From: Antechinus flavipes
Lineage: Eukaryota
Direction: 5' to 3'
Assembly: GCF_016432865.1 (NCBI RefSeq)
Contig: NC_067399.1
Span: forward strand, 261,392,001-261,456,000
DNA: 64,000 bases
Below the pieces are notes generated by a model, which saw nothing but the letters and a program-made list of their open reading frames with translations, did no database searches and was not told the origin of the DNA. Of this stretch, positions 10,055 to 36,266 are shown piece after piece; the stretch's first letter is position 1; each line of letters opens with the position of its first letter. A program made the translations under genes and the position numbers.

Positions 10055-11575
10055 TTACAAGGCCAGTAAGAGGGTGATAGGACAATGGTCACTACCCAGG
10101 GCTTTGGACCGGATCTTACTGTCACATAAGGCAGGGAGCAAAGACTGGGATAACAAGAAATAGTCAAGCCGCCAGCCAACATTCTTGGCTCGGGCATTCA
10201 TCATGTAAGTCCAAAAAGTATAAGCATAAGCTGCCTCTGGATAGAGATGGCGGAAGCTGTCAGTCAGTGGCACTGCTTGGAGCAGTTCCCCAAAACCTTG
10301 GCGTTCCTGTGGGGTAAAACCAGCATTTTTCTTGTTCCCTTTGGGATTACGCAAGTCAATCTCTTCATGGGCCACATTGAGGTCCCCACAGAGCACAAGT
10401 GGCTTTTTGGCATTTAGCCCCTTCAAAAACTTTCGAAATGCTTCATCCCACCTTTGTCGGTATTCTAGTCGAACCAGCCCCCGTCCTGCATTAGGCACGT
10501 ATGCTGTCACCAGCACAAAAGCCTCAAACTCAGCCACTATCACCCGGCCCTCCTGATCATGCTCTTCTTCACCTATGGAATTGGACACAACAAACTCAGA
10601 GGCCAAGCATTAAGAAGTGAAAGTGAAACACTTTCAGAGCTTAAGGAGAACAAGGGTTAGGGCAGCAAGCTATCATGTCTCACCAATGCCAAAAGTGACG
10701 TTGAGTGGGCACTGTCGAGAAAGGAGACCAACACCACTATATCCTTCTTTATCTGTGGGTGAGGACCAGTACTGGTAAGTAAGTCCAGGCAGATCCTGAA
10801 GTTCGGATGGCAGCTTGCTCTCTGAACATTTGGTTTCTTGGAGGCAAAGGATATCTGGGGCTTCTTCCTTTACCCACTGTACATGTAGAAAAGAAGGCAG
10901 GTTATAAGGGCTCAGCCCAGCCCATCACTCTGCCTCTCCTCCAACTCATCCCAAAGCCTATGTTCCCAGAATGAGATAATGGCATTTTTAAGGAGAAAAC
11001 CTTGAAAAGCAGAGAAAGTAATAGGGGAAGGCTCCCCAAAGTAACTCGGTACTCTTAAGAACCAAGTCATCTTTCCTCCCTAAAAACCATACTCACATCC
11101 AGACCCTTTTTCTTGATCCAGGCCCGGAGCCCATCCACATTCCAAGAGCATATCTTGAGTGTAGAAGGTTTGCCATTAGGTGAGGTCTGCTGGTCTGGGG
11201 GATCTTCATACACAGCAGATCCTTCCCCTGTTGCCTCCTTGTCTTTTGCACCTTTCTTGGTTTTCTTTGGCTGGGGTTCTGTTAAGTTTTATTGGGAAAG
11301 GGAATTTCAGATTTTTCAAGATGATAGCAGCTACTCTTACCTCAAGTGACCCCGGGATAACCTGTTGACCAAGAGATCCACCCAAAGGAAACAGACTGAC
11401 ACCTTTTCCCAGGAATGGGAAAACCCTGATAAGCTGTACTTCCGTCTCCCAAGGTTCAGGCCTCAGACTGCAGGGGAGGATAAACAATCAAGGACCACGT
11501 GTTACCTTTAGCCTCTGACTCCTCATCACTGATCCCATCCTTCACAGAAACTTCCTTCTTCCCTCGTTTCGGCAT
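10055..11575 (-). CDS. APEX1: DNA-(apurinic/apyrimidinic site) endonuclease APE1/Ref-1, 320 aa
   Basis: Coding exons 11575-11506, 11278-11097, 10876-10684 and 10572-10055 sum to 963 nt. Motifs [41 protein letters not shown] and SDHCP. Minus-strand AATAAA at 9952-9957. Acceptor of the ATG exon at 11640. Confidence 0.98.
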
Positions 11576-12572: not shown

Positions 12573-17623
<5,051 letters not shown>

Positions 17624-18382
17624 CCTAGTGAGGAGAGAGGGTCACACAGGATCAACACCAAGGAAAATCTGAATTTGTGGAACCTTCCTGTTATTAACTG
17701 TCCACATAATGGGTTTTAGAGTAGGTTCCCTATTATCTCTTCTAAAGAGCTGAGTTTCATCATGATTGAGCAATAATTTTTGTGTGTCTGTCACTAACAT
17801 GGATTTCTCAAAACCCATATGAATTGCCTTGTGCCAGGTACATAGAGCATGTTAAATAAATGCTTATTTGTTTGACAAGCTGACTAAATAAAAGTCTTAT
17901 TGACTAGAAGAAGTGATAGCCAATTTTTTCAAGATGAGAAAAGAAATGAATTGAAAATACATGAAAAGGTTGTTTTGATAACAGAAATTTGGCAGCAGAA
18001 ATGATTGGCTGTAAGACTAAGACTTGTGGTGGGAGGTTGAACTACCTTACCTGTATATTTCTTTAAGATATATTTCAGCAGACATTTATTGAAATCCTAT
18101 TTGAAGGAGCAGGGAGCTGATTGTATAAATGGGGAACAAGGATGCCACTGTTGCACATTAGCCTTGGATGTTTAGTTAAAATTTGTTTTAATAGTTTTGA
18201 GGTAATGAAGGTGTGGGAGAAGGAACCCTGCTTTGGGATTGTATACTTGTTGAGGGTTAGGAAGGGAAGAGCTCCTCCTTTATGACGAGCTGAGCTCTTG
18301 CCTAATAAGGTTCCTGTGGGGAACCTTCTCTTTCCTCCCTTATCTGCAGCTGTCATTGGCAGCAAGTGGTCAGAGAATTAAC

Positions 18383-18470
18383 CAATATAAGGTGAAGCGG
18401 GAGAACTCGAGAGAAGGAGACAGCAAGGTCAGTGAGGTGGTCAGGTGGGGGGCTCAGGAGTTGCAAAACA
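18383..18470 (-). pseudogene. SLC12 pseudo-exon, weak match to NCC exon 16
   Basis: PPPDHLTDLAVSFSRVLPLHLIL followed by GTTAAT resembles [30 protein letters not shown]. Heavily decayed. Confidence 0.4.
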
Positions 18471-18792
18471 ATGCCTCCAGGCCAAATATTTGACTTTTTT
18501 GTCAAGCCAGGCCTTGTGCTAAGAATGATTTTTACATTTTGCAAAATATAAAGCCCATTTTTAGCTCAAGTGCTGTACAGAAACAGGCAGCTGGCTAGAT
18601 GTGGTCCTCCAACCCTTGTTTACCCACTCCTGCTTTAGCCTGTTGCTTATATCCTCTGCACATATGCGAGTACACACACACCTACACACACATGCATTTC
18701 AAGGTCTGTAGTAGAAGTCGTCCCCTGCTCTTTTCTTAATTCTTACTTAATGCCCTATTTCCTATATTTCCATTCTCCATGCCCTTCCTTAC

Positions 18793-18933
18793 CAGGCTTC
18801 CTATGGAAACTGTAGAATAGCAGAAGAATGAATCATACAGCTATTAGTGCTGCTCACCAGGTAAAGAAAAACATGATTAGCGGGCAAAGCAGGGATAGCC
18901 ACGGACTATACCATTTTAATTAAGGGTGCCAAT
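18793..18933 (-). pseudogene. SLC12 pseudo-exon (NCC exon 14 equivalent)
   Basis: Intact AG/GT. Translation WHP*LKWYSPWLSLLCPLIMFFFTW*AALIAV*FILLLFYSFHRKP versus NCC WRPSFQYYNKW...IMFLLTWWAALIAI...YKKP. Three stops. Confidence 0.9.
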
Positions 18934-19107
18934 CTAAGCCAGAGAGGAGACTATAAACTGTCCCTCACTATTAATCCTCAACTATGACTCAGACTTACGA
19001 GGTTCTATTCCAAATCATCAGCCACCTCCTGGGTCCCAGTTCTGTTGACAGCACCCTCCCAATTTTTTTCTCTAAATCTCCCCAATCTAAGAAATTCCTG
19101 CAGTCAC

Positions 19108-19212
19108 CAGGTGAGTGGGTGAGCAAGGTGTGGAAGCAACTGAAGTTGACAAGGGCATACATAGGAACAGGAAGAAGTTGGAGATGGTGGAAGCAATAAT
19201 GTTCAGCTTGAG
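19108..19212 (-). pseudogene. SLC12 pseudo-exon (NCC exon 13 equivalent)
   Basis: Intact AG/GT. Translation LNIIASTISNFFL..YALVNFSCFHTLLTHSPG versus [34 protein letters not shown]. Internal indels. Confidence 0.93.
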
Positions 19213-19561
19213 CTTCAAAGGAGAAATGAGAGCTAAATGAGAACATTCAAAGTGAGGAACATGGGAAATGGGCTCAGAAATCTTGGGGAATCATCCCCAT
19301 AGCTTCCTATAGATTGAGTCATTTTCTTAAATTCTAGGGAATTGGAGAAAGGGGAAGTAGGGATGATGGATGAGTTTTTAGAAACAAGTATTAAGTGCCT
19401 ATTATGTGTTAGGCACTATGCTAAACACTACATATTATCTCATTTGACGGAAGGGGTATAAGTCCAGGACAACTTAATAGGGGAATAGGAGGGGGTACAA
19501 GCTACATAAAAGAGGAACAAAGCAATGGGTGGGGCCTGATAGGATGAGGAAGAATCTTTAC

Positions 19562-19676
19562 CAATGAAAATAAAGCCTATAGCAATGATGGTGAGCAAGT
19601 GCCAGTGACTCATTGTTCTTGTTCATCCTTTCCCAAAGAAGCTAATGACAGGGTACAGCTTGTCCTGGCATAGACA
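19562..19676 (-). pseudogene. SLC12 pseudo-exon (NCC exon 12 equivalent)
   Basis: Intact AG/GT. Translation CLCQDKLYPVISFFGKG* ... LLTIIAIGFIFI versus CLCEDQLYPLIGFFGKGYG...AIAVAFIII. TGA at 19623-19625. Confidence 0.93.
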
Positions 19677-20349
19677 CTGAAGGAGTGGGTGGTTTAGTAA
19701 AAGCTGAGACTGGAATCCCCACGTGATGGGTAAAACAACACTTTTACCTCCTTTACAGGGGTTGGGAAGGATTTGTAAAAGCATAAAAATGACAGGAACC
19801 TGAGACAGAGATGGTATGGGGGAAATGTTGTGGAGAGGTGAGGGGATAGAGAGAGAGAGAACTCATGGAATCTCAAGGATGTACTGGCTCTAAACCAAGA
19901 TACATCTTTAGATGAATATGGAAGGAGATGGTGTGCTAGTACAGGCTCTCACAGATTCCTGACAGTGTATTAAGTTTTCAATATAAGCATTTACATTTGG
20001 AAGTTGGCAAATGCCACAAAATTAGGACTTAATTGATTGTTTTATTCATTGTCTACTTGTAAGAAAGGGATGGAGAAAATGTTAATAATGCAGATTGAAT
20101 TTGAAGCCTTTCGATATTGTATGGGTTTTNNNNNNNNNNNNNNNNNNNNNNNNNNNNNNNNNNNNNNNNNNNNNNNNNNNNNNNNNNNNNNNNNNNNNNN
20201 NNNNNNNNNNNNNNNNNNNNNNNNNNNNNNNNNNNNNNNNNNNNNNNNNNNNNNNNNNTCTTTTAAAGAACCAACCAGCTAGAGCCATATGTGTCCCTAC
20301 CTGACTATAAGGAACCCCAAACTCCCCACTTGTCCTTCTCCTGACTGAC

Positions 20350-20445
20350 CTGGAAGACTTTGGGAGCAGAGACAAAGCAGGAGAGAGCAGAGTGTAGCAC
20401 TGAAGATTGCAGCAGAGAACTGAAGGCAGACACCATGCTCATGGT
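20350..20445 (-). pseudogene. SLC12 pseudo-exon (NCC exon 11 equivalent)
   Basis: Intact AG/GT. Translation TMSMVSAF...(shifted frame AAIFSATL)...SALSCFVSAPKVFQ versus [36 protein letters not shown]. Confidence 0.93.
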
Positions 20446-20607
20446 CTAGAGAAATAAGGTTGGTCAAGAATAGAAACTGAAGTCTACTCATTCTTCCTTT
20501 CTCCCCTCCCCCTCTTGGATTTCCTCCAGACCAGAATAACTTCTGCTGTTAATCAGTCATCTCAATATCATATCCTCATTCGAGCATCTCTCTTCTTTGT
20601 CACTCAC

Positions 20608-20759
20608 CGATTGATAGTGGTTAGACAGTCCATAGGTACAGGAGCCAAGTTCCTTACAGCTGCTGAAGCCCCAGCCATTTGGATACTCTGGCCCATAGCT
20701 CCTATTCCTCACACCCATATCTATCATATTCCCTGAAGCTTCTGGCACTACACAGGAAC
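20608..20759 (-). pseudogene. SLC12 pseudo-exon (NCC exon 10 equivalent)
   Basis: Translation SCVVPEASGNM...GWGFSSCKELGSCTYGLSNHYQ versus SCVVRDASG...[22 protein letters not shown]. The acceptor reads AA and the donor GTGAGT. Confidence 0.9.
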
Positions 20760-20949
20760 TTGAGAAGGGGCTAAGGATACAAGTCTCTTCTCAGGGAGAG
20801 GCCCCTTTCTAAGGGCAACACTGCAGAGTAGATAGAACAGTCCAACCCTCCCTCAGAACAGGAATTCCTTCTACAGTAGCCCTGGTAGGATGATTCAGCC
20901 TTACATGTCTGCGTTTTAATAATCAAAAAACATAAGATGATATATAAAT

Positions 20950-21120
20950 TGTATTTGTTCGGGCTAGCTTTCTGGAGGTCCTCCGGAAGGGCCTTGGATA
21001 CACACCATGAGGATGGACAGGAATAGAGTCCAAAGTTTTTATTGTCTTTTACACAGTCTATGTCTGTCATAGTCTGATTCAGTCTCCTCCAGCAGTCTGC
21101 CAGTCTGACTTCCTTGCAGA
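20950..21120 (-). mobile_element. LTR 3' fragment
   Basis: On the minus strand it has GACAATAAAAACTTTGGAC and ends ...AGCTAGCCCGAACAAATACA. Truncated by the pogo element. Confidence 0.55.
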
Positions 21121-22560
21121 ATAAGACACTGTCTTATTATTTTTTTGGACAGAAAAACACCAGAGGGCTTATTTTCAGGGGAGGGCTTATTTTAATGAAC
21201 ATTGACAGCAATTTTAATAAACAGGTAAACGTGAACAAAAAAATGTACCTTTATTCAATAATGATCATGTCATCTTCTTCAACAACATCGTCATAAGTGT
21301 CCATACCCTGAATTCCGTCCTGGATGTCTTGCGCCTCTATTTCCTTCAGAAGAAGTGGACCCAATCTGTCATGTCCAGCAATATAGCTCTCTTTAAATGA
21401 ACATGTCTTGTCCAGGTAACCTGCCTTGGCGACACAGCTATCAGTAATTTTATCCCATGACTTCTTCACCCAAGTCACAACTTCTTGCAGACAGGGCTTC
21501 ACAAAGTTTCCACGCTGATTTCTTTCCATTCTATTTTCAATGTAGTCATTGACTTCCATGCGCAAATGGTCCTTGAATGGCTTGTTTATTGCAATATCAA
21601 GGGTGTGGAGATAGGCAGTCATTCCTGCAGGAAACCATTACTTGATCTATTCTTCTCTCTGCAAGGAAGTGCTGGCTGAATCCCAGATTATCAGACCTCT
21701 TTGGTTACCTCGCATAACAAGTGGCAGCATTAAATCAACCCACTTTCTTATAACGGCTTGTGTACATCAGACTTTTTCGGTTTCAAGAACATAAATGCCT
21801 GATACACGTTCAATCTTATCTTTCTTGCCCTTGATGATTAGAGGTGTGGCTTTCTTTCCATCCAAACGAATTGCCAAAACACAGGTGACCTGTGCACTTT
21901 CATAGCCAGTGGTGGGAATGTAGATTGACGTTGTACCCCTGTGATGAATTGTTGTTTGAGATCCTTGTCCCATAAACACTGCAGTTTCATCCATAGCAAT
22001 CATATTGCAGGTTTGGTACTTGGAAATGTCGATCCTATCAATAAAGGACTTGAATGCAAGTGCACGTTTAATAACTTCAGCATCTTCCAGCTTAAACAGT
22101 GTTGTTGATCTTCTTAGGGACAGTTCATACCATTGAAGGAAACTGTCCAACCAGTGTTGTGATGCTTTGAATTCTTCTGAGACCATTTCAAACTCTGGTG
22201 CCATTGAAAGGGCAAATGCTTGAATATCAGCCCTGCGCACAACCAAGGCCTTTGCTCTCCTGTCAGCAATCCATTCACCAATGAGGATCTCCAAGTCAGG
22301 ATATAAAGGTTGCCAACCTGATCCAGACCTGCGCTTTTTCCCTTTTCCCTCATCCACTTGTTGATTGAGGTTATTATAATCTGCTCTCCATTTTCTGATC
22401 ATTTGAAGATCCAAAAGTTTTTCTTTACAGAAAACTGCAAGATTCTTGCCATGTGACTCTTCTACAATTGCTTTCTTGTACTCAACAGTATAGCTCTTCC
22501 TTTTTGTACTCATGTCTGGGGGTCAAAACAGACAGAATAATAAAATTATGACCATCAGTC
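21121..22560 (-). mobile_element. pogo-superfamily (POGK/Passer-like) DNA transposon with a decayed transposase
   Basis: ORF 22513-21767 has an N-terminal helix-turn-helix region (KRKSYTVEYK...) and MDET. An in-frame TGA replaces W, then come WDSAS, a deletion and a 1-nt insertion, and TLDIAINKPFKD with an acidic tail to 21251. Subterminal palindrome ATAAGACA-C-TGTCTTAT and repeated GGGCTTATTTT. Full TIRs are not present. Confidence 0.9.
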
Positions 22561-22578
22561 CTTTTTTTCACTCCAGAT

Positions 22579-22917
22579 AAATCTCTCATTATAAAAGAGT
22601 TAAGCTGGAGCCCTCTTTTTGCAGAGGTCCCAAACATGCCAGCCTTACACCTGGCATGCCAGGATCCTCTGTCCACTGAAATCCTGTTTCTGGTGCCCTT
22701 CTTATTTCTATCTTCACCTATTTCCTTAACTGTACTTTAACCTTACTTCCAAACCCCATAATAAACCTCTTTTATCAATCTAGCTTCGGGCCAATAAATT
22801 CCTTCATTGGGAACTCGTGCCGCCACTAGACCTCATTTAACTCCATATCCTTGCGCTGCTGCTAGACCTCAATTAAACCCTAATTTCATTTAGGTACCCC
22901 ATATCTAGACCTCATCA
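22579..22917 (+). mobile_element. 5'-truncated LTR, family B copy 3
   Basis: Similar to 1934-2435 and more diverged. Ends CTAGACCTCATCA. Confidence 0.8.
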
Positions 22918-23039
22918 GATATCACTTTTGCCCGTTATATTCTCTTCATTATCAGCCTCTATTTCCTCTGAGAGGTTGAGCCAAGTAAAGACCAAGTAAT
23001 TCTGCAGGTGGGTCTTACTGATAGTGAGCTGAATCTTAC

Positions 23040-23125
23040 CAATAGTGGCAGTGGTGCCCAGGTAAGAAAGGATAGTCCAAAAGATGGCAAGGAGGAATGG
23101 CCTTAGGAATCGCTGTGGCTGGGTC
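23040..23125 (-). pseudogene. SLC12 pseudo-exon (NCC exon 9 equivalent)
   Basis: Translation DPATAIPK..(+1)..LLAIFWTILSYLGTTATIG versus [29 protein letters not shown]. The acceptor reads TG and the donor GTAAGA. Confidence 0.93.
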
Positions 23126-23589
23126 CAAGAGGCAGAAGCAAAGTGGAAAGAGGAAAGTGAACTGCATCTTCATACACACAGAGTTCTCATTGCCCCCACG
23201 CTCTTTCCCCAAGGTCAGCTCACTTCATTTAAGTTCCACCCTAACTCTTCTCCAATCGACGTCCTCTCATCCCCTCTAACAAGACTCTGCGTTGACAAAC
23301 ATCAGGTTTTGAGGAAGCTGGCGTGTTCTACTCCATCTCTGAGATTCAATGACCCCCTCTCACACTAGCCTTAAGATTGAGGGGAAATGCCATACCTCCT
23401 TGCAACGTGGGCCTCTTTCTCTGAGCACTTCATTTGAGTTCCCCAAGGCTTCTGGCTCTCCTGACACCTCCCTCTTTTTAGAGATTTTTGAGCCTAATCT
23501 TCCTTGCTTCATGAAAGAGTTTTCCCATCAGCCCTTACATCTCCCATCCTCCCTCTGCACTCTCTTCCAATAAGCTTCAATGTGCCTGG

Positions 23590-23706
23590 CTTGGACTCCT
23601 ACTCCATGCCAGCTAGTGAGACACCCAGCAGGATTATCATGGTCATAGTCCCCACGATCCTCAATTTGTTCTCTGGCTCAATCTGCTGCAGCTGCACCCC
23701 ATGTTT
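23590..23706 (-). pseudogene. SLC12 pseudo-exon (NCC exon 6 equivalent)
   Basis: Translation KHGVQLQQIEPENKLRIVGTMTMIILLGVSLAGME*ESK versus ...[30 protein letters not shown]. TAG at 23599-23601. Donor lost. Confidence 0.92.
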
Positions 23707-23886
23707 CTAGGTGAGGAGGGGTAAGGGAGAGGATCACAGACAGACCTTCAAGTAGAGAAAGTGTGTGGAAGGGAGAGGTGCACAGGGAAAGAAGCCCAAG
23801 ACATGCTTTGTCAAGGGGAGGATCACTTCTGGAAAGAGAAAAGGGAAAACATGAAGTGGGGAATGGGGTGTAGCTGGGTGCCATAA

Positions 23887-24016
23887 CCGAAGCAAGTCAC
23901 AGAAAGTCTCAGCAAAGCCCATGGGATGCATAGCCACAGCATCGGCAGGGGCCAGAAGAGGCGGATGGTGCCTCTGAGCTCCAGACCTGGACTCTGGAAG
24001 ATCAAGAACTTCGTGC
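23887..24016 (-). pseudogene. SLC12 pseudo-exon (NCC exon 5 equivalent)
   Basis: Translation GTKFLIFQSPGLELRGTIRLF..(shift)..AVAMHPMGFAETFCDLLR versus [23 protein letters not shown]...VAMHTVGFAETVRDLLQ. The donor reads TT. Confidence 0.9.
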
Positions 24017-24020
24017 CTAA

Positions 24021-24446
24021 TGTGAAAAGGTGCTCCAGATCACTATTGATCAGAGAAATGCAAATCCAGACAACTCTGAGACACCACTACACGCCTGTCA
24101 GATTGTCTAGAATGACAGGGAAAGATGATGAATGTTGGAGGGGATGTGGGACAACTGGGACACTGATGCATTATTGGTGGAGTTGTGAATGGATCCAACC
24201 CTTCTGGAAAACAATTTGGAACTATGCTCAAAAAGTTATTAAACTGTGCATACCCTTTGATCCAGCAGTGTTACTCCAGGGCTTATATCCCAAAGAGATC
24301 ATAAAGAAGGGAAGGGGGCCTGTATGTGCAAAAATGTTTGTGGCAGCCCTGTTTGTAGTGGCCAGAAATTGGAAACTAAGTGGATGCCGATCAGTTGGAG
24401 AATGGCTGAAAAAAGTATGGTATATGAAAGTAATGGAATATTATTG
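24021..24446 (+). mobile_element. L1 ORF2 C-terminal fragment, truncated at both ends
   Basis: Translation REMQIQTTLRHHYTPVR...CIPFDPA...MFVAALFVVARNW. Same subfamily as 43311 and 53497. No poly-A tail. Confidence 0.9.
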
Positions 24447-24899
24447 CCTATGATTGGACTAGCTCTTTGGAGGGCCTCAGAATCAATCAGCGTCAGGATC
24501 AAATTCCTTGGTCTTTAGGAGGAGAAGTAAAGGAGGCAGGCAAGTTGCCATGCAGCTCGTCAAAGATGAATCCTGGACTCCGGAGTCTGGAGTCTCCAGC
24601 TCTCTCCTCTTCCTGCCTCAGAGTGACTCTGACCTCTCTCCCTCAACCCTCCAATCCTTGCCTAAGATTACCTCACTACCACACATTCAGCAAGCCCCAA
24701 TTGTAGGAGAGCCATCACATCACCATCTCTCTAAATATATGTATATAGAACCATCATCTCACATCGAATAGGTAATTAGCCTTAAGTGCTCTGCTGTCTC
24801 AGGTTCAAGTATACCTTTTAGAGTTTCAGCCCTCTACAATTGTCCTATAAAAATGATGAACAAGCTGATTTTAGAAAGACCTAGATCCAAGAAAACTCT

Positions 24900-25290
24900 C
24901 CTGGATGGATAAAACATGAGGGGGGAGTAGAAATAGAAAAAAATCCACATATTATCATCTCAATGAAATCCTTTGTGGAAAATGCACAAAAATATTACTA
25001 CTAAATTTCAAAACCAGAACAAAGGGAAAATTTTGCAAGAAGCAAGAATTCAAATACACCAGAGCTACAATTAGAATTGTACAAGATTTCCAGAAATTAC
25101 AATAAAAGACTGTACTCATAGTTACCAACAATCAAAATAACTAGACCAGCTGCCAAAATCATATCCAAGAAAAATATCCATGATATTAAATGAAAAAATG
25201 AACATTCAATGAATTTGCAGATTTTCAGAACTTTCTATCAACCAAACCCAAACAATAGAAAATTTAACATATAAGAGCCAATATCAAATA
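24900..25290 (+). mobile_element. Old L1 ORF1 C-terminal remnant
   Basis: Decayed similarity to KILQAARK..FKY.GATIRI.QD and KWTFNE..DFQ.FL. Confidence 0.5.
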
Positions 25291-25828
25291 TCAATTTCAA
25301 GAAACTCAATATGGACAAATGGTTTATTTTTTTTTTACATGTCAAATACATACTCTATGTTTGATTCATAGCAACAACAGGGTAGTTCAAAAGAAAGATT
25401 GGCAGAGTTAAGGTAAAAATTAATTATACAAATGAGGTGCAGAGGAAGAATGGACACAGAAGCATTGCAGTAGTTCTGAAAACCTACTCAAATTGGGAAT
25501 CTTCCCTGATGTTTTGCTAAGCACATGATAATGTTCTCTTTTGTTTTGCATTCCTTTTCTGTTTTTCTGGGGTTTTTTGTTTTTGTTTTTTAATTTTAAA
25601 AAAAAAGTCTGGAAAGATTTACACAAACTAATGCTGAGCAAAACAAGCAGAACCAAAAATACATTGTATACAGTAACAACAAGATTGTGTGATGATCAAC
25701 TATGAACTTGGATCAACTTGGTTCTTCTTAGAACTTCTCAGAAGTTCAGTGATCTAAGGCAATCCAATAAACTTTGGATAGTAAATGTCATCTGCATTCA
25801 GAGAGAGAACTATGGAAACTGAATGTAA

Positions 25829-26016
25829 GGCAGTTAAATGGCGCAGTGGATAGAGCCCTATCCCTGAAGTCAGGAGGACCTGAGTTCAAATTTGGCCTCA
25901 GACACTTAATACTTCCTAGCTATGTAACCCTGGGCTAACACTAACCCCAATTGCCTCAGCAAAAAAAGAAAAAGAAAGAAAGAAAGAAAAAAAGAAAGAA
26001 AGAAAAAGAAACAAAA
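25829..26016 (+). mobile_element. WSINE1-like CORE-SINE with an A-rich tail
   Basis: GGCAGTTAAATGGCGCAGTGGATAGAG...GAGTTCAAAT...CCCCAATTGCCTCAGC followed by (GAAA)n. Confidence 0.85.
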
Positions 26017-26494
26017 CTGTGGTGAACAAGGCAGAAAGAAGAATGATAACTCATGTGAGTCATAATTAACATCCCTGGATTCTAATGCTCAGGCCCCAAA
26101 CACTGTCCTTCAAAACTCTCCTGTCTAAGTCCTTTTATTGGTTCATACCCATACCAACCTGGGCTGTGATCTAGGGTAACTAAAGGTAGAGGATGTGTTT
26201 CAGGGACAATCCCCCAAAGCTTTGGTTATTGACTTGTCCATTTTCTACCAAGTTAGAATCCAAGAAGAAACAATACTATTGAAGAGGAGAAACAAAAGCC
26301 AGTTCTATCCCCAGGATGGACTGAGAATTTAAGAGGTTTAGGGAGGAGGAAGTGTAGAGGACAAGAGTCAGGATTGCAGATCGAAAATGACCCATCTCCA
26401 CGGTCTTGTACCAAGGGACAAGTTCAGGGTGTTCCAAAGCTCTCTACCTATTGGAATGTTCAAAGATTGTGTACTTCTTTCTTCCCACCTGGAA

Positions 26495-27330
26495 TTTTTT
26501 TTCTTTTCTAGTAAATTTATTTTTTAATATACATTGCTTTATAAATCATGTTGGGAGAGAAAAATCAGCAAAAGGGAAAAACCATGGGAGAGATTAAAAA
26601 AAACAGAAAAAAAGTGAACATAGAATGTGCTGATTTACTTTCATTCTCCTTAGTTTTTTTTTTTTTTTTTTTTTCTGGATGCAAATGGCATTTTTTGTCT
26701 GAAGTCTATTGGGATTGCTTGGATCACTAAACCACTGAGAAGAACCAAGTCTTTCTTAGCTGATCATGCACATTCTTACTATTATGGTATACAATGTATT
26801 CGTGGTTCTGCTTGTTTCACTCAGTATCAGTTCATGTAAATCTTTTCACGCATTTCTAAAATCAGCTTGTTCATTTTTTATAGAACAGTAATATTCAATT
26901 ACCTGCATATATCATAACTTGTTCAGCCATTCCCTAGTTGATGAACATCTACTCATTTTCCAATTCTTTGCTACCACAAAAAAAAAAGCTGCTAGAAACA
27001 TTTTTGTACATGTGATTTCCCTGGGACCCAGACTCAGTAATGGCACTGCTGGGTCAAAGGGTATGCACAGTTTTTAGCCCTCTGGGCATACTTCCAAATT
27101 GCTCTCCAGAATCATTGGATCATTTTACAATTTCACCAACAAAACATTCGTGTCCCAGTTTTCCCACATCCCTCCAATATTTTTCTGTCATCTTAGCCAA
27201 CCTGAAAGGTATTTTAATTTTCATTTCTCTAATCAATAGTGATTTAGAGCATTTTTTCATATAGTTATGGATGGCTTTAATTTCATCATCTGAAAATTAT
27301 TTGTCATATCTTTTGACCATTTATCAGTTG
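26495..27330 (-). mobile_element. Older L1 3' end
   Basis: T-rich tail plus antisense ORF2 end. Flanked by a decayed direct repeat CTTTC..CCAC.T..GGA / CTTTCCACTCAGGA. Confidence 0.8.
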
Positions 27331-28671
27331 CTTTCCACTCAGGATGAATGACTTGGGATGAGTAGTAGTGTGCAGAGCATAACTTAATCTTGGTCCCAGG
27401 ATTCCTGAGAGGGCTGAGGTTCAAGACTTTGGGATTTTTTTCTCCTAAATGAGGTTGATTTCTGGTTATTGATAATTAAATGAAAAGATTCCTAGACAGA
27501 GTGACACCCAGTTCAGAGGAATGGGTATACAACTTCTCAAGAGTAGAACTAGCAATTCACCCTTTATGTGAGGAACAGAGAGAAAAGCCTACACACAAAA
27601 AAAAGGACATGTTGAGACTGGTGACCAAGCTGGCAAGAGTCCCATGTGCTTTGGTTGGGTTATAGGAATCATGATAAGGAATCACAGAAGGAAGTCTGAG
27701 GAATAAAGAGGGCTGAAGAGACAGAGAGGAAATAGGGAAAGCTATGGGTTTCAGGAAAACTAAAACCAAGAGAAGTTAGGTGGCCTCACCTATGGAGAAT
27801 AGGTCAAAGGAGAAATAGGTCAAAAGGAGAATAATCAAAGGCACTTGGGAGATAAATTCTTGAAGAAAGGCTACTGATCCTTCTCGGAGGTTTTCTCCCC
27901 CTAGATGTGCTGCATGCTCAAGTCGGTCAGATGTTTCAGGGGGATTTCACAACCAGAAGCATCATCTGCAAAAGGGTTGCAAAGATGAGCCCTGGGGAGA
28001 AGATCCTAAAGAAATTGGCTCCTGGCTAGGTATTCCAAAGTCTTGTGCCTCAGCCAATCTCAGGACTGGTTCCTGGGACCCGATTGAAGTTGTGTCCTGC
28101 ACACCACATCCCGTTCCAAGTCAGTCAATCCTGAGTGGGAAAAAGAAGGAAGGAAGGGACACGATTTTTGAATATTCTAGCACGTAGAGAGCTTTGGAGC
28201 ACTCTGAACCTCTTCCACAAAGCCTAGAAGATGGGTCATTTTCGATCCACAACCCTGCCCCCTATTCTCACGCCTCCCTCCCACCCCTCCCAACCTCTCA
28301 GGTGCCCGGACTACCTTGGGGATAGAGCTCTTCAGTAGCATAGTTTCTTCTTGGACCCTAGCTTGGTAAAAACTGGAAAAGTCAATAGCCAAAGCTTTGG
28401 GGGATTGTCTCCGAAATAACTCAATTCGCTGCAGCCCCCTCTTAGAGCAGGGCTCACTTCCCTCTACTCGCCTTTCCATCACTCTCACTATCAGCGGCTC
28501 AGACAGCTTTCCTGGGTTATTCTCGTTCTTCCCTTTTCAATTCTCGACCTGTCATGGACTTTTTTATGTTCAGCTCCCCTATCTACAAGTGGGAGAGAGG
28601 TCATCCGAGGACCGGGCTCTAGGGATTGGGTGTCCAAGTCCAGGCAGCCGCAACCTCAGCCCCTTACCCGA

Positions 28672-29157: not shown

Positions 29158-32100
29158 ATGAGTTCCCCAGGCACCGTGATCTGCAGCGAAGACGAGGGGC
29201 TACTTTCCCCTCAGTTCCGGAAGGACTACCCCAGCCTCTCTTTACCAACTCAGCAAAGCCCCAGCTGGCCTTCCTCCCCAGACGAAGACTCGGGTCTACT
29301 TCCCTTCCCTCTGGGACAATCCAGTCACCGGGCCTCCGAGCTTGGAGATCTTCCTTCTCCTTCCTTGTCCCTGGAGGAAGATGAAGAAGGGGAAACTGAG
29401 GCGCTAGTGAGTGAGGAGCACCCAGGCCAGTTCTTTGCAGAAGCTCGAAGGCTTCGGGACTTAAGTCTGCTGCTAGATGAAGAGGTAATAGTGCAGGGTC
29501 GAAGGTATGCGGTGCATGGGGCGGTCTTGGCTTCAGTCAGCAGCCTCTTTCGCTCCCGGCTGCTGGGGAATGGGGACCCAAGACCCCCCATACAGCTGGA
29601 CGTAGCACCCCAGGGTTGGGAGGCAGTGCTGACCTTTGCCTATGAGGGGGTGGTGGGTCCCGCCGCTTTGGGAGATGTGATAGCGGCAGCGGAGCTCCTG
29701 GGAGCCCCTCGGGTAGCAGCAGCTGCCCTAAGGAGACTGGAGGGGGACCGGAACCAAGGAGACAAGGAACAGGAGGGACCGGATAAAGCTGAGGAGTTGA
29801 GAGAGAATCTGAGCAGCATGGAGCAGCTCTATCGTGAGGGTGTTGGCTGTGACCTGGAGCTGGAAGCAGAGGGCTGCCACCTGAAGGGTAAGCACCTAGA
29901 CAGGGAGAGAGGGAGGAGGATGAGGAAGAATCGATGGGAAGCAAGGGCAGATACCGACAGGATTCTGCGCATTCACTAAACTAAAAGGATTAAGATAGAA
30001 TTTGGATGCAAAATAACTGAAGGGTATATTACTTACTTCCTTAGGTTCTCCATATATCAAGGATCTACTGTCAAACAGAACATGAGCTTTGAGTTGTTTT
30101 TCCCATAGTGGTGATAGATTTACACTGACCATGCACTCTTTCTATCCCTGTCCTCTCTTGAGATAAACAACATTCATTTACAGGACAGCTGGCTGGAGTT
30201 AGTATACAATCTGTGACAGTAGATACAAGCAGCAGCCAATTGGGGCAAAGAAGGATAAACCTGACATTGGCCTGTTGGTCTGGCCATGCTCTGGTGCCAC
30301 ACATTACTAGTGGAAGGAACGATGTTGAAAAATGATTATCAATTAATGCTTGTCACACATTGGCTTGAAGACTTGGGTCTTCTACAGATGCTAAACAGGA
30401 TTTCTTTTCTTTTCATTTCTTTTCTTTTTTCTTTTTTTTCTTTTTTTTTTTGATGTGGTACAGCCCTTAGGAAGGATATAGTCTTGGATTATTGCTATAG
30501 CCTTTCTTTCTTTCTTTCTTTCTTTTTTTTAATAACTTTTTATTGATAGAACCCATGCCAGGGTAATTTTTTACAGCATTATCCCTTGCATTCACTTCTG
30601 TTCCGATTTTTCCCCTCCCTCCCTCCACCCCCTCCCCTAGATGGCAAGCAGTCCTTTATATGTTGAATAGGTTACAGTATATCCTAGATACAATATATGT
30701 GTGCAGAACCGAACATTTTTCTTGTTGCGCAGGGAGAACTGAATTCAGAAGGTATAAATAACCCGGGAAGAAAAACAAAAATGCAAGCAGTTTATATTCA
30801 TTTCCTAGTGTTCTTTCTTTGGGTGTAGCTGCTTCTGTCCGTCTTTGATCAATTAAAGCTCTCTTTATCGAAGAGATCCACTTCCATCAGAATACATCCT
30901 CAAACAGTATCGTTGTTGAGGTATATAATGATCTTCTGGTTCTGCTCTAAACAGGATTTCTTGCTCAGAACTCAGTTTAATGTGATCTCAAAACTCCTCT
31001 TCCAAAATTCCCTGGTTTTCAAGATCATATCCTTTCTGACACATTCCTTAACCAGTAGAGCCAGTGCTAAATAGGTAAAATATTAGTTAATTTTGTCTAT
31101 GCATCCAGGGGATGAGGAATGCTGCTGAAACTGCTCAGGGAGTCTGATGTGACTTATCCTAGTGGCAGATGTCAAGAACATAGCTCAGTAGAGCTCAACA
31201 GATCTCAAGGGCTGGATCTTTCAATTTTATCTCTGGCCCCTAATACTCGGTACAAATACCAAATGACCAAAAAACAAAACAAAACAAAACAACCCTGGTG
31301 CCAGCATCCAGAATAATAGAACTGGGAGTAGAAGGGAGTTTTAGACATCATCTAGTTCATTCTTGTTTTCCAAGTGAGAAAACAGAAGGTTTAAGAGGAA
31401 AGTCACTTGGGTGCTTAGGATTACACAAAGAATTAGTGGCAGAACCAAGGTAAACCATAAACTCAAGTTTTCTGAGGTTCAGTCTGCCACTCTTTTTGTT
31501 ATTCTACATTGTCTTCAGAAGAAAGTTCCAGTTGAGGCACATCTGTGTGGCAGAGTGGTATATAAAACAATTATGTTTACAATCCAATTCAGTAAGTGCC
31601 CAACATACGTGAGCTTAGGCAGCTAGTTGTGAAGAATTTATTAATCACCTTACTATATTCCATGTAGCTAAGTGGCATAGTGGATAAAGTTTTAGGCTTG
31701 AAATCTGGAATACCTGATCTCAAATCTAGCCTCAGATACTTACTAGCAGTATGACTTTAGGCAAGTCACTTGCCCCTGTTTGCCTCAGTTTCCTCATCTG
31801 TAAAATGAACTGAGGAAGAAAATAGTCAAGTACTCCAGTATCTTTGCAAAGAAAATCCCAGATGGGGTCATGAAGAGTTATTCACAACTGAACAACAACA
31901 AATATAAAGGGTGCCATACCAAGCATTAAGGGTCAGAGACAAAATGAAAGCTCCAGACTTTAAGGTTTACTGAGATTTACTGAAGCCTCTGTGGCTGTGT
32001 TCCTGGCACTTCACACAGGCATAAGTCATATCTGACTCCCTGAAAAGTTTTAACAGCATTCCTCATGAATCCAAGTGAGCAGGACAGGATTGCCAGCAAT

Positions 32101-35100
32101 GAGGTCCTGGAATGGAACCAACTTACTGTCATTCAAGTGATGCTCACTGCAAAACAGCTTCAATGAATGCAGAAAGTACACTGGCACCCTACCCAAGGAG
32201 CTGCTGTGTGTCAGACCCTGCTCTATTACTATCTGACTTTTTGAACACAGGCATACTTATTTACTTACCTAAATCTCAGTTTCTTCATCTTTAGAATGGG
32301 AGGGGAGAGAAGATGGGAAAATGGAGATATGAAATGGTCTCTAATAACTATATCCAGGGAGGAAGTTATGGGTGAGAGTAAAGAGAGCCCAGGATTGGAA
32401 TTAGGAAGATCATCTTTCAGACATTTAGTAACTGTGTGATCCTGGATAAGTCACAGAAACTCTCTGACTTAGAGAATAGGGATAATAACCAAGTCTATCT
32501 CCCTGGGTTATTGTGAGCTATTAATATATCTTTCTATTAGAGCACTATTCTAGAGTAGTATAAAGTTCACAAGCATTTTCCTCACATTCCCCTCGCTATG
32601 GAAAAGGTAGTGGAATACAGTAGCATACCTATTTTTTTTTTTTAAAAAGGAGGCTGAATCTAGGAGAGGGGGTGGGGGGAAGGAGGGAAAGTTGGAACAG
32701 AAGGTTTTGCAAGGGTCAATGCTGAAAAATTACTCATGCATTATCTCTTGTAAATAAAAAGCTATAATAAAAAGAAGAGGAGGGCTTAAATAATTTGACC
32801 AGAATTACACAGCTATTAAGTGTTGGAGATGTTATTCAAATCAGGTTTTCTTCTAACTCAGTCTAACTGCCCTACTCTATGAATTGGTCCCATTCTAGTC
32901 TATGAATTGATCAGGCAGATGGAAGAAATATCATTGGAGAAGGAGAGTCAGTGTGTGATAGTACAAAAAATTAGATTTGGAATCAAGGGCCTGAAGTCTA
33001 ATTCCACTCTTGCGCCTTGAGATCACTTAGTTTTCTCTCATCATCTCATCATCATTATCTGTCCTACCCACTTCTCACTGATGTTATGAGGTCCCTAAGA
33101 GGAAAGGTAGTTGAAAGCACTTCCAAACCAAAAGGTGCTTTCTATAAAAAGGATTCTGTATAATCAGGCTGCACCAGGCAGAGGTTCAAGCCATGTTAAC
33201 TAAATCTAGGCTTCTGAATGACAACAGAAGCAAGCAGACATAGGAACCTGGAGTGTGCCAATTAATCTCTAGGAGAAAGGAAACTTGTTAAATAAAGATT
33301 TGATTGCAAAACTGAGTCAGAAATGCAAATAGTAAAATAGCAAGATAGCAGCATCTGTTGTTAAGCCAAAAGTAATCTTCACAGGTACAAGGTATGAGCA
33401 GGGCTATTGGCTGTATCCTTGTCTTTGAAGCACATCTATCTGCCCTTGCAGTATTATCAGTGAGAAACTAGATTAGGAATAACAAGAATAGTGTTCTGTT
33501 CCAGGTGACAGCTTAGGGCCCAGTGGTTCTCAAACCTTTGTTCTCAGTATCTTCATATTGTTAAAAAACTATGGAGGATCTGTTCAAAGAGTTTTTGTTC
33601 ACATGGGTTATAGTTATTGCTATTTATTATATTAGAAATAAAATCATTTTGAATTTGTAGACCCTCTGAAAGGGTTTCAGAGACCCCAACAATTCTTTGG
33701 ACTACACTTTGAGGACCACTGGCTTAGGCTCTTTAGTTAGATTGGAATATGGGGAGTTCTATAATATAGTAGACAGTATCGGAGGTTGGCATTAAAAACA
33801 GGAAGAGCTGTCGGGGTTGGTTGGGAGCCTGGCATCTGTTCTGACCCCATGCTCTCCCACATTTCCTGTACCCACAGTGCACCGCGTGGCTCTAGTCTGC
33901 GGGAGCGAGTTCTTCGGAGCGATGCTCCTGAGTGGGATGAGGGAATCTCAGGGCTCAGCTGTCACACTACGCACAGTCTCAGCCGCAGAACTGCAGCTCC
34001 TCGTCTCCTTTGCCTACTCAGGGGCACTGCAAACAAACTGGCCAGGGCTGCTGAGGGCCACCCTGACTGCCCTGCAGTACCAAAGCGGCTCCTGCTTGGC
34101 CTTGTGCCAGAGAGCCCTGGCCCGAGGCCTTAGCCCAGTCCGATGCTTGGCCTTGCTTCCCGTGGCTGAAGCCCCAGGACTGGAGAGACTTTGGGACAAA
34201 GTCCATCACTACCTCCTCAACCATCTGCCGGCTGTGGCGGCCTGCCCTACCTTCCCAGACCTGCCCCGTCCCTTCCTGGCCAGCCTCCTGGCCAGCGACG
34301 AGCTGCATCTAGAGGAGGAATTCGAGGCTTTCGAGGCGGCGTGGCACTGGCTGGCGGCAGATCCCATTGGCAGAGAGCCTGAAGCGGAGCCTCTACTGCG
34401 CTGCGTCCGCTTTGGTCGCATGTCCACGCGGGAACTGCGGCGAGTGAGAGCTGCCGGACTGCCCCCGCCGCTGCCCTCGTCCTTGCTACACCAGATTCTG
34501 ACGGCGGCCGAGGTGCCGGGCCGAGCAAGGCGGCGGGAGCCCGAGCGGGCGCTGGTGGTGATCGGCGGAGACGGGCTCACTGCGGACTTAGCTCAGAGCC
34601 AGCCGTCGCGAGGGGTGTGGTGGGCGCGCGCCTTCTGCAGTGGCGTGGGGCTGGTGCACACGGTGGAGTGGGGGAGGCTGCCTGCCCTGCCCCTCCGGGG
34701 CGCTTCCGGCATGGCGCTGCCAGTCTCACTGGGCGGGAGCTGTACGTGTGCGGAGGGCAGCACTACTACAGCCACTCAGACACGCTGGCCTCCGTGCTCA
34801 GGTAGGGGAGAGAGGGGCAGATCAGACTAGCCTTTGTCGCTGGGTGCCCCCTCTTCTTCGGGGCTCCTTCGACCAGGTGACTCTTCGTGGCTCCCCTGTC
34901 GCCCAGCCTTACTTATCTGGCAAGGGATTGCGGAGGGAGGGCTTTGGGGGTGAGGCGGAAAGCAGCAAGCCCGGTGGGTGCCAGAGCCGGAGAGAAGAAC
35001 TCAGGAGGGAGGCCAGATAGCTCTGCTGGAGGGGAATGGAGGAAGATGTGCAGCTTCAGCGGCACCTCCCAAGCACCAGGTTAACTCTGCCCGTCTCTCT

Positions 35101-36266
35101 TTCCTCTGTGTGTTCATAGGTGGGCACCTGGCCAAAGTAATTGGGAAGAGTTGGCGCCAATGTGTCAAGCTCGGTCTTTCTTCCCACTGGTGGCTCACGA
35201 TGGACATCTTTATGCCTTGGGTGGGAGAGACAAGGGGGCTGCCTTGGATTCGGTGGAAGCCTATGATCCCAAGCTTGATGCTTGGAGGTGAGCAAAAGAG
35301 ATCAATCAATTAGTAGGCCTTTATTAAGTGCCTATTAGGTGCTAGAGAAAATAGTGATGGAGAGGAACCAGGTTTCTCCTAAAACCATAGCAACTACTTT
35401 CCCTTAAACAAGATAATCTTTTATTACTTTAGCAGGGATCTGTCCTTTCAGTCAATTCTTAGACTCACAGAATCTCAGAGTTATAGGAGATCTCAGAGAT
35501 TATCTAGTCCATTCCCTTCCTGACCAAGAATCTTCCTGTTTCATTACTTGTGCCCTCTGCCTCTGTTAGGGATAATGGGATATTCAGACAGATCCACATC
35601 TGTATCACGATGCCCACATTTAACTGGCCCAAGACGCTCAGTGTCATGAAGGGGTTGGAGTGACCTAGAGGTAGACAGGGAAAGGAGGCCCAGCCATAAG
35701 AAGGAAGTTAAGGCTGTGGGCTGCCCTTCTCTGCTGAGACAGTCCTTTGTTCTTCCTACAGGTCAGCACCACCCCTCCCCACACCCTGCTTTGCACACGC
35801 AGCCTCTGTGTTGGATGGTCAGGTCTATGTGAGTGGAGGCTGCAATGAGTTTGGTCAATATCTGGCCTCCCTCTTTAACTACAACCCTACTCGCAAGCCG
35901 TCATGGGTCCTGCTGAATCCTATGAAGACCCCTCGGGCAGGTCATGTCATGGTAGCCCTGGGTGGACGACTCTATGCAGCAGGAGGTTTGGGTGAGGCCG
36001 GAGACTTGCTTAGTTTTGAAGCATATGAGCCCAGGACTGACACCTGGATGAGCTTGGAACCTTTGCCCTCTCCCCACGTGGGAGCTGCTGGAGTCTCTCT
36101 TCAAGGGGAGATCCTAGTTTTGGGGGGCTACAGTCACCAAACATATGCTCTCTCCCACCTCATTCATGCATACTGCCCCGGCCTAGGCCGCTGGCTTTGT
36201 CTGGGAACCTTGCCCCGGCCCCGAGCTGAGATGTCTGCCTGTGTCCTTCAGCTATCTCCCATATAG
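29158..36266 (+). CDS. KLHL33: Kelch-like protein 33, long BTB-BTB-BACK-Kelch form (about 775 aa if the frameshift at 34690-34693 is corrected)
   Basis: Exons 29158-29887, 33878-34801, 35120-35287 and 35762-36266, all GT-AG and phase-compatible after adding 1 nt. Motifs VHRVALVCGSEFFGAML, GRFRHGAASL, YALGGR and YCPGLGRWLCLGTLPRPRAEM. Confidence 0.9.
30407..30946 (-). mobile_element. 5'-truncated young L1 with a 3' transduction
   Basis: 16-bp TSD CTAAACAGGATTTCTT (30391-30406 and 30947-30962). L1 body at 30531-30946, with two tails separated by 51 unique nt. Confidence 0.88.
31664..31900 (+). mobile_element. Mar1-like CORE-SINE
   Basis: tRNA-like head, CORE segment CCTCAGTTTCCTCATCTGTAAAATG, and an RTE-like tail ending ACTGAACAACAACA. 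Confidence 0.75.
33521..33721. mobile_element. hAT-type MITE
   Basis: Terminal inverted repeats CAGTGGTTCTCAAA / TTTGAGGACCACTG. Approximate TSD GCTTAGG. Confidence 0.65.

What the first reader, a model, noticed from the sequence alone, without database searches (positions are those of the whole stretch)
18051..28479. Hidden Na-Cl cotransporter pseudogene (probable NCC2/SLC12A10) between OSGEP and KLHL33
Seen: eight minus-strand exon remnants in NCC order 5, 6, 9, 10, 11, 12, 13, 14. Their sizes and phases are close to SLC12A3 and they carry hallmark peptides (AMH.MGFAET, SLAGME*ESK, DPA.AIPK, YGL.NHYQ, SAPKVFQ, LYP...FFGKG, YALVNFSCFH, TW*AALIA). At least five stops, several frameshifts and four broken splice sites. 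It has introns, so it is not a retrocopy. Recalled but not verified here: NCC2/slc12a10 is a second NCC gene kept in fish, amphibians, reptiles, platypus and horse, lost in most mammals, and I recall it lying next to klhl33. Inference: this is the marsupial relic of that gene, recording an independent loss.
Basis: partly seen in the sequence, partly recalled or inferred. Interest (0 to 1): 0.9.

Follow-up and report, generated by a model that had tools for sequence, protein, structure and literature searches.

The report
Dead SLC12A10 salt-transporter gene relic
This stretch holds the decayed remains of a second sodium-chloride cotransporter gene (SLC12A10/NCC2) in a dasyurid-type marsupial; the relic is real, but this gene is already known to be dead in most mammals.

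Summary
Remnants of exons 3b and 4 also exist. Exon 2 plus the first 14 nt of exon 3 lie inverted on the + strand. Exons 7-8 and 15-26 are deleted.

The window copy has 8 stops at aligned codons, at least 8 frameshifting indels and about 7 lost splice sites.

The relic sits tail-to-tail with OSGEP and head-to-head with KLHL33. An intact annotated SLC12 gene occupies that position in a turtle, and an NCC-like gene lies 3 kb from APEX1 in Xenopus.

In a tree, the window, Tasmanian devil and Dromiciops relics join a black-rhino copy from the same locus and the protein named horse SLC12A10 (support 100/100). Union with mammalian SLC12A3 is rejected (AU p = 0.00015).

Codon positions have evolved at equal rates since the Dromiciops/dasyuromorph split, so the gene died at about that split or earlier.

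SLC12A10 pseudogenes at this locus are already reported for "various mammals" (Motoshima 2023, cited in PMC11145369), so novelty is modest.

The scan had separately noted the inverted 5' end on this same window (s1-189947).

The parts
18793..18933 (-). Exon 14 relic. It carries three stops (TAA 18922, TGA 18856, TGA 18835) and 12-nt and 3-nt deletions. It is the last exon remnant present.
   Evidence: It shares derived residues (WYSPWLSL, FHRKP) with the rhino copy and not with human NCC.
19108..19212 (-). Exon 13 relic with +1 and +2 insertions.
19562..19676 (-). Exon 12 relic with a stop (TGA 19625) and -1, -5 and -3 deletions.
   Evidence: The DNA is 91% identical to the turtle exon over 44 nt.
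20130..20258 (.). Assembly gap inside intron 11. It does not touch any exon.
   Evidence: the devil is collinear on both sides.
20350..20445 (-). Exon 11 relic with -7 and -5 deletions. Its splice sites are intact.
20611..20759 (-). Exon 10 relic (extracellular loop). The acceptor is lost and 3 nt are inserted before the donor. This is the exon that best separates the paralogues.
   Evidence: It is 66% identical to horse SLC12A10, E = 1.5e-15.
21114..22642 (-). Insertion in intron 9 carrying a decayed Tc5/pogo-type transposase frame with three stops. It is absent at the same site in the devil.
   Evidence: Pfam HTH_Tnp_Tc5 and DDE_1.
23040..23125 (-). Exon 9 relic. The acceptor is lost (TG) and a +1 insertion is specific to the window.
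23156..23225 (.). Junction of the deletion that removed exons 7 and 8. It corresponds to 926 bp of Dromiciops DNA that still holds both exons.
23590..23706 (-). Exon 6 relic with a stop (TAG 23601). The donor is CC (the ancestral mammalian donor was GC). This exon is deleted in the devil.
23887..24019 (-). Exon 5 relic with a 7-nt deletion. Both splice sites are lost.
26010..26061 (-). Exon 4 relic, 5' half only. It carries TGA at 26053, which is shared with the devil and Dromiciops. The rest is overwritten by a (TTTC)n run.
26149..26194 (-). Exon 3, 3' part (3b), with two TAG stops (26182, 26173). It abuts the rearrangement breakpoint.
26198..26472 (.). Inverted-repeat arm A, which borders the inverted segment.
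   Evidence: pairs I1, I6, I8.
27590..27673 (+). Exon 2 relic, inverted onto the + strand. The donor has changed from GT to AT.
27905..27918 (+). First 14 nt of exon 3 (3a) with its AG acceptor, inverted onto the + strand.
28159..28416 (.). Inverted-repeat arm A', the partner of 26198-26472.
12576..17623 (+). OSGEP, the flanking gene tail-to-tail with the relic. Only about 1.2 kb separates its stop codon from exon 14.
   Evidence: Motif scan of the + strand. In Petaurus a 335-aa TsaD gene ends 10 kb upstream of KLHL33.
29158..36263 (+). KLHL33, the flanking gene head-to-head with the relic.
   Evidence: Pfam BTB, BTB_KLHL33, BACK and Kelch; 87-97% identical to devil KLHL33.

Best explanation
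This is a pseudogene of SLC12A10 (NCC2/NCC-beta), the second Na-Cl cotransporter gene of bony vertebrates, most likely the genome's only copy. It lies in its ancestral position between OSGEP and KLHL33 in a dasyuromorph marsupial that is close to, but not the same as, the Tasmanian devil. It encodes nothing.

Shown: the gene lost purifying selection at about the time Dromiciops and dasyuromorphs split, or before. It has drifted neutrally since.

Shown: dasyuromorphs then accumulated further damage. Exons 7-8 and exons 15-26 were deleted. An inversion with duplicated arms cut exon 3 and flipped exon 2. L1 and pogo-type elements inserted. Many stops, frameshifts and splice-site losses followed.

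Inferred: there was a single inactivation in a common australidelphian ancestor, independent of the losses within placentals.
For: Family: pieces of the relic hit only SLC12A3 and SLC12A2 chains in the PDB. No SLC12 hit lies elsewhere in the window.

Orthology by sequence: the window, devil and Dromiciops relics form a clade with the rhino copy and the protein named horse SLC12A10, at 100/100. The marsupial relics are monophyletic at 99/92. Union with mammalian SLC12A3 is rejected, with delta lnL = 42 and AU p = 0.00015.

Orthology by position:
- the turtle has an annotated intact SLC12 gene head-to-head with KLHL33, with exons 3-15 giving a 500-aa open frame and all splice sites AG/GT;
- the rhino copy is in the same place;
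- the Xenopus NCC-like gene lies 3 kb from APEX1.

It is dead: 8 stops, at least 8 frameshifts and about 7 lost splice sites. Exons are missing. The 5' end is inverted.

It evolves neutrally. The rate ratio of codon positions 1+2 to position 3 is 1.02 (0.73-1.47) on the window branch and 0.91 (0.55-1.51) on the Dromiciops branch. On the older stem plus the rhino branch it is 0.30 (0.23-0.38). Window-devil divergence is equal at all three codon positions (0.085, 0.106, 0.082) and matches the flanking DNA at about 90% identity.

The TGA in exon 4 is shared by all three marsupials. The TGA in exon 14 is shared by the window and Dromiciops.

Literature: the gene is kept in platypus and horse and pseudogenised or deleted in most mammals (PMC11381001). 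Pseudogenes at the same locus are reported in various mammals (PMC11145369).
Against: The tree does not by itself join the mammalian SLC12A10 clade to the reptile gene beside KLHL33. The NCC backbone is a polytomy, and the join is merely not rejected (p = 0.354).

The shared stops are weak evidence for a single loss. All lie at TGG codons. 4 of 9 conserved TGG codons are stops in each lineage, and an overlap of 3 has P = 0.17 by chance. No frameshifting indel is shared between Dromiciops and dasyuromorphs.

The lower confidence limits of the codon-position ratios still allow the gene to have been functional for part of the time after the split.

No opossum DNA was obtained.
Confidence: 0.92

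Rival explanations
1. The relic is a decayed segmental duplicate of SLC12A3 (NCC) that landed by chance between OSGEP and KLHL33.
For: Individual exon pieces score about as well against human NCC or frog SLC12A3 as against turtle NCC2. The NCC backbone of the tree is unresolved.
Against: A clade of the relics with mammalian SLC12A3 is rejected (AU p = 0.00015). Amniote SLC12A3 forms its own clade at 100/99 without the relics. The relic groups at 100/100 with the protein named horse SLC12A10. Intact or near-intact genes occupy the same position in turtle and rhino.
Confidence: 0.02
2. Two or more separate inactivations occurred within marsupials, one in Dromiciops and one in dasyuromorphs soon after their split, and not one ancestral loss.
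For: No frameshift is shared between the two lineages. The stop in exon 6 is TGA in Dromiciops but TAG in the window. The overlap of stops at TGG codons has P = 0.17 by chance. The lower confidence limits of the codon-position ratios (0.55 and 0.73) allow some functional time after the split.
Against: The point estimates of the ratios are close to 1 on both branches. Two identical stops are shared, and the TGA in exon 4 is present in all three marsupials. One loss is more parsimonious than two.
Confidence: 0.3
3. The locus still does something, for example as a non-coding transcript from the promoter region it shares with KLHL33, or as a truncated protein.
For: Head-to-head gene pairs often share bidirectional promoters (general knowledge).
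Against: There is no open frame. Exon 2 and part of exon 3 are inverted. Exon divergence equals flank divergence, and all three codon positions evolve alike. The devil and the window differ by whole-exon deletions and insertions.
Confidence: 0.04
4. The lesions are assembly or sequencing artefacts in an otherwise intact gene.
For: The region holds one assembly gap (20130-20258).
Against: Most lesions recur in two independent Tasmanian devil assemblies (L003, L004) at about 90% identity, and some recur in Dromiciops. A second sample of the same organism holds 81% of the sampled words. The gap is intronic.
Confidence: 0.01

Closest known systems
SLC12A10 pseudogenes at the same locus in other mammals (Motoshima et al. 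2023, Physiol Genomics 55:113; known to me only through PMC11145369 and PMC11381001)
   Same: The parent gene and chromosomal neighbourhood are the same. It is an unprocessed pseudogene left by lineage-specific loss.
   Different: This is a marsupial (dasyuromorph) copy. I could not read that paper, so I do not know whether marsupials were covered. Added here are an exon-by-exon lesion map, the inversion of exon 2/3a, the loss of exons 7-8 and 15-26, and a dating argument from Dromiciops.
Horse SLC12A10 (NCC-beta), reported as a retained, apparently active gene
   Same: It is the closest named relative in the tree (clade 100/100). It is 66% identical to the relic over exon 10. Its rhino orthologue has the same position beside KLHL33.
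   Different: The horse protein is an open frame, while the window copy is broken throughout and lacks about half of its exons.
Turtle (Emydura macquarii) SLC12 gene beside KLHL33
   Same: It is head-to-head with KLHL33 in the same way, and the exon boundaries and phases of exons 3-15 are identical.
   Different: It is intact (958-aa product). It is no closer in sequence to the relic than NCC1 proteins are, because the mammalian SLC12A10 lineage evolves fast.
SLC12A3 (NCC), the thiazide-sensitive cotransporter; solved structures such as 7Y6I and 8FHT
   Same: It belongs to the same NCC subfamily with the same transmembrane core. The best PDB hits for exons 10, 11 and 14 are NCC chains.
   Different: It is a different paralogue with a separate clade at 100/99. 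Union with the relic is rejected.

Membership tests
SLC12A10 (NCC2) orthologue | Sequence belongs to the Na-coupled NCC branch of SLC12, not to NKCC or KCC. | tested here: met
   The NCC clade of 26 rows is separated from NKCC1/2 at 100/100 and includes the relic. PDB hits are only SLC12A3 and SLC12A2.
SLC12A10 (NCC2) orthologue | Groups with a named SLC12A10 and not with SLC12A3, SLC12A1 or SLC12A2. | tested here: met
   It forms a clade with 'solute carrier family 12 member 10 [Equus caballus]' (P0227) at 100/100. AU rejects union with mammalian SLC12A3 (p = 0.00015).
SLC12A10 (NCC2) orthologue | Lies at the conserved locus (APEX1-OSGEP / SLC12A10 / KLHL33) where outgroups keep an SLC12 gene. 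| tested here: met
   The turtle's annotated SLC12 gene is head-to-head with KLHL33. The rhino copy is in the same place. The Xenopus NCC-like gene lies 3 kb from APEX1. A cobra locus was uninformative because nothing lay within 10 kb.
SLC12A10 (NCC2) orthologue | The mammalian clade is sister to non-mammalian NCC2 in a sequence tree. | tested here: inconclusive
   The NCC backbone is a polytomy. Union with the reptile clade beside KLHL33 costs 1.1 lnL, p-AU 0.354. Only partial proteins of up to 651 aa could be fetched.
Unprocessed single-copy (unitary) pseudogene | Introns are retained at the parental positions. | tested here: met
   The remnants are spread over 9 kb in parental order. Their edges match the turtle's exon edges, and several AG/GT sites are still present.
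Unprocessed single-copy (unitary) pseudogene | Disabling lesions and neutral evolution. | tested here: met
   It has 8 stops, at least 8 frameshifts, about 7 lost splice sites and missing exons. The codon-position ratio is about 1.
Unprocessed single-copy (unitary) pseudogene | No functional copy elsewhere in the same genome. | not testable with these tools
   Only this 64-kb window of the genome is available. The scan's notes for this genome mention no other SLC12 gene, which proves nothing.
Unprocessed single-copy (unitary) pseudogene | No productive transcript. | not tested
Processed pseudogene (retrocopy) | Intronless, with contiguous exons. | tested here: not met
   The exons are separated by introns of 0.2-2.3 kb that are collinear with other marsupials.

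The most novel reading that the evidence does not exclude
SLC12A10 was inactivated once, in or before the common ancestor of Australidelphia and possibly of all living marsupials. This would be independent of the placental losses and would make the exon 4 TGA a dated, clade-wide marker. The black-rhino copy also shows fresh frameshifts, so the gene would be a case of repeated, still ongoing loss across therians.
Probability: 0.55. Interest if true: 0.35.

Novelty: new member of a known kind. Interest (0 to 1): 0.3.

Why it matters
This is a clean example of a gene that died in place and can be traced exon by exon. It adds a marsupial data point to the published picture that the second Na-Cl cotransporter, used for ion uptake in fish gills, was lost repeatedly in land mammals.

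The Dromiciops comparison gives a rough date for the loss. The lesion map offers markers (exon 4 TGA, the exon 7-8 deletion, the exon 2/3a inversion) that could be scored across marsupial orders.

It changes nothing about how NCC transporters work, and the loss in most mammals is already in the literature.

Tried and rejected
- The protein-atlas search with the same piece gave only noise.
- Pfam on seven exon pieces gave no family.
- One PDB search was wasted on a wrong reading frame.
- Motoshima 2023 (PMC9988527) is not held. No held paper links slc12a10 with klhl33 or osgep.
- The look-up of encoding contigs found nothing on record for the seal isoform and for opossum KLHL33. It gave no DNA for golden mole, sugar glider and bilby.
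- The cobra NCC2-like locus and the Pelobates SLC12A3 locus had no KLHL33 or OSGEP within 10 kb, so they were uninformative.
Later local scripts used window.fa only as a BLAST subject on the closed machine.
- Retrocopy, SLC12A3 duplicate and assembly artefact were each considered and rejected (see the rival explanations).
- Shared stop codons were considered as proof of a single loss and downgraded after the TGG-codon test.
- No exon 1 relic was found in marsupials by tblastx.

Full report
**What is in the sequence**

Translating around them shows short conserved stretches broken by stops and frame changes. Pieces searched against the PDB hit only SLC12A3 and SLC12A2 chains. They are too short for Pfam or for the large representative library.

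**Neighbours**

- Pfam on the large open frames shows KLHL33 on the + strand, with BTB at 29158-29976, BTB_KLHL33 plus BACK at 33817-34827 and Kelch at 35808-36263.
- An APEX1-type exon lies at 10055-10606 on the minus strand.
- A pogo/Tc5-type transposase remnant lies at 21251-22513.
- OSGEP runs on the + strand from about 12576 to its stop at about 17621.
- The order is therefore APEX1(-), OSGEP(+), relic(-), KLHL33(+). The relic is tail-to-tail with OSGEP and head-to-head with KLHL33.
- The window's KLHL33 is 87-97% identical to that of the Tasmanian devil, and the flanking DNA is about 90% identical. The animal is a dasyuromorph, but not the devil itself.

**Synteny test**

KLHL33 proteins from other species were used to fetch their loci.

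- In the turtle Emydura macquarii (L001) an annotated 958-aa gene with AA_permease_N, AA_permease and SLC12 domains lies on the opposite strand, 4 kb upstream of KLHL33.
- I read its exons 3-15 from the DNA. All have AG/GT borders and together they give a 500-aa open frame.
- A black-rhino locus (L002) has homologous exons in the same place.
- In Xenopus laevis (L008) the 'solute carrier family 12 member 3-like' gene lies 3 kb from the 3' end of APEX1.
- In the sugar glider the gene table shows OSGEP ending 10 kb upstream of KLHL33, with nothing annotated between them.

So outgroups do keep an SLC12 gene at this locus.

**Anatomy of the relic**

tblastn with the turtle peptide, per-exon alignments of turtle, rhino, Dromiciops (L005), devil (L003) and window, and programmatic tallies give the map listed under 'parts'.

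- Present on the minus strand are exons 14, 13, 12, 11, 10, 9, 6 and 5, half of exon 4, and the 3' part of exon 3.
- Exons 7 and 8 are still present in Dromiciops. In both dasyuromorphs they are removed by a deletion: window 23156-23225 corresponds to L005 4429-5355.
- Exon 15 survives in Dromiciops only. No trace of exons 15-26 lies between exon 14 and OSGEP, a space of only about 1.2 kb.
- Exon 2, intron 2 and the first 14 nt of exon 3 lie on the + strand at 27590-27918. They sit between inverted-repeat arms at 26198-26472 and 28159-28416.
- This inversion has one breakpoint inside exon 3. It is shared with the devil and absent from Dromiciops. This explains the separate scan note s1-189947.
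- The window copy has 8 stops at aligned codons, at least 8 frameshifting indels and about 7 lost splice sites.
- The assembly gap is in intron 11 and is bridged collinearly by the devil.

**Which paralogue**

Short pieces cannot reach full-length proteins in the search for homologous proteins. The GC-rich turtle DNA, however, contains a 372-codon stop-free stretch that includes exon 5 in frame.

Searching with that reference, scoring only exon 5, returned 146 partial SLC12 proteins. These include 'solute carrier family 12 member 10 [Equus caballus]' and named SLC12A3, SLC12A1 and SLC12A2 fragments.

I translated the relics codon by codon in the turtle's frame, writing X at stops and gaps, and built trees. 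The careful tree has 40 rows and 600 columns.

- NCC and NKCC separate at 100/100.
- Amniote SLC12A3 is a clade at 100/99.
- The reptile genes related to the turtle gene beside KLHL33 form a clade at 100/99.
- Horse SLC12A10, the rhino copy and the three marsupial relics form a clade at 100/100. Within it the marsupials are monophyletic at 99/92.
- The relations among these NCC clades are unresolved.
- An AU test rejects joining the SLC12A10 clade to mammalian SLC12A3 (delta lnL 42, p = 0.00015). It does not reject joining it to the reptile clade beside KLHL33 (delta lnL 1.1, p = 0.354).
- tblastn of horse SLC12A10 against the window gives its best match on exon 10, at 66% identity and E = 1.5e-15. 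Frog or pangolin NCC proteins reach only 39-45% there.
- In exon 14 the relic shares derived residues with the rhino copy that neither the turtle nor human NCC has.

**When it died**

- Window and devil differ equally at the three codon positions (0.085, 0.106, 0.082).
- With the rhino as outgroup, changes were assigned to branches. The ratio of positions 1+2 to position 3 is 1.02 (95% bootstrap interval 0.73-1.47) on the window branch and 0.91 (0.55-1.51) on the Dromiciops branch.
- The same ratio is 0.30 (0.23-0.38) on the older shared part, which is the signature of a working gene.
- Both lineages have therefore been essentially unconstrained since they split. From general knowledge I place that split at about 55-65 million years ago.
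- A TGA in exon 4 is shared by all three marsupials. A TGA in exon 14 is shared by Dromiciops and the window, and the devil has CGA there.
- These stops sit at TGG codons, which mutate to stops easily. 4 of 9 conserved TGG codons are stops in each lineage, and an overlap of three has P = 0.17.
- No frameshift is shared.

I therefore favour one loss in the common ancestor, but cannot exclude two losses soon after the split. No opossum DNA could be fetched.

**Known or new**

PMC11381001 summarises that SLC12A10 persists in ray-finned fishes, coelacanths, amphibians, reptiles, platypus, horse and zebra. It also says the gene was deleted or pseudogenised in birds and most mammals. [quoted passage not shown] The marsupial relic is thus another member of a described kind. 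Because horse and platypus keep the gene, the marsupial loss is independent of the placental losses by parsimony.

**Limits**

- Whether this is the genome's only copy could not be tested from one window.

Noticed in passing
L002:3300-8300 (black rhinoceros, upstream of KLHL33): The rhino SLC12A10 copy has no stops in exons 3-15. It does have a 10-nt deletion in exon 13, a 5-nt deletion in exon 15 and changes in the conserved ISRSLGPELGG motif. It is not annotated as a gene. It may be a recent pseudogene, although the horse is reported to keep the gene.
   Followed up: partly
window 21114-22642: An insertion in intron 9 carries a pogo/Tc5-type transposase frame of about 430 codons with only three stops (HTH_Tnp_Tc5 and DDE_1). 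It is absent at the same site in the Tasmanian devil, so it arrived, or was replaced, after the two lineages split.
   Followed up: partly
window 26198-28416: An inversion with duplicated inverted arms of about 275 bp has one breakpoint inside exon 3 of the dead gene. It is shared with the devil and absent from Dromiciops. It matches the scan's separate note s1-189947.
   Followed up: yes
L008:10001-25475 (Xenopus laevis): The frog NCC-like gene is convergent with APEX1, not with OSGEP. The APEX1/OSGEP pair therefore seems to be flipped relative to the arrangement in this marsupial window.
   Followed up: partly
window 25960-26020 and 24020-24446 / 26886-27262: A (TTTC)n run has overwritten the 3' half of exon 4. 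Two L1 3'-end fragments lie in opposite orientation on either side of exons 3-4.
   Followed up: no
window 29158-29886: KLHL33 here has a long first coding exon with its own BTB-type match, which gives the roughly 775-aa form seen in marsupials, turtles and many placentals. The 533-aa human form lacks it.
   Followed up: no
L005:3662-4378 (Dromiciops): Exon 9 of the Dromiciops relic is split by an insertion of about 715 bp. Exon 6 has TGA where the window has TAG at the same codon.
   Followed up: partly
No reads were laid, and the letters were kept away from search tools afterwards.
   Followed up: no
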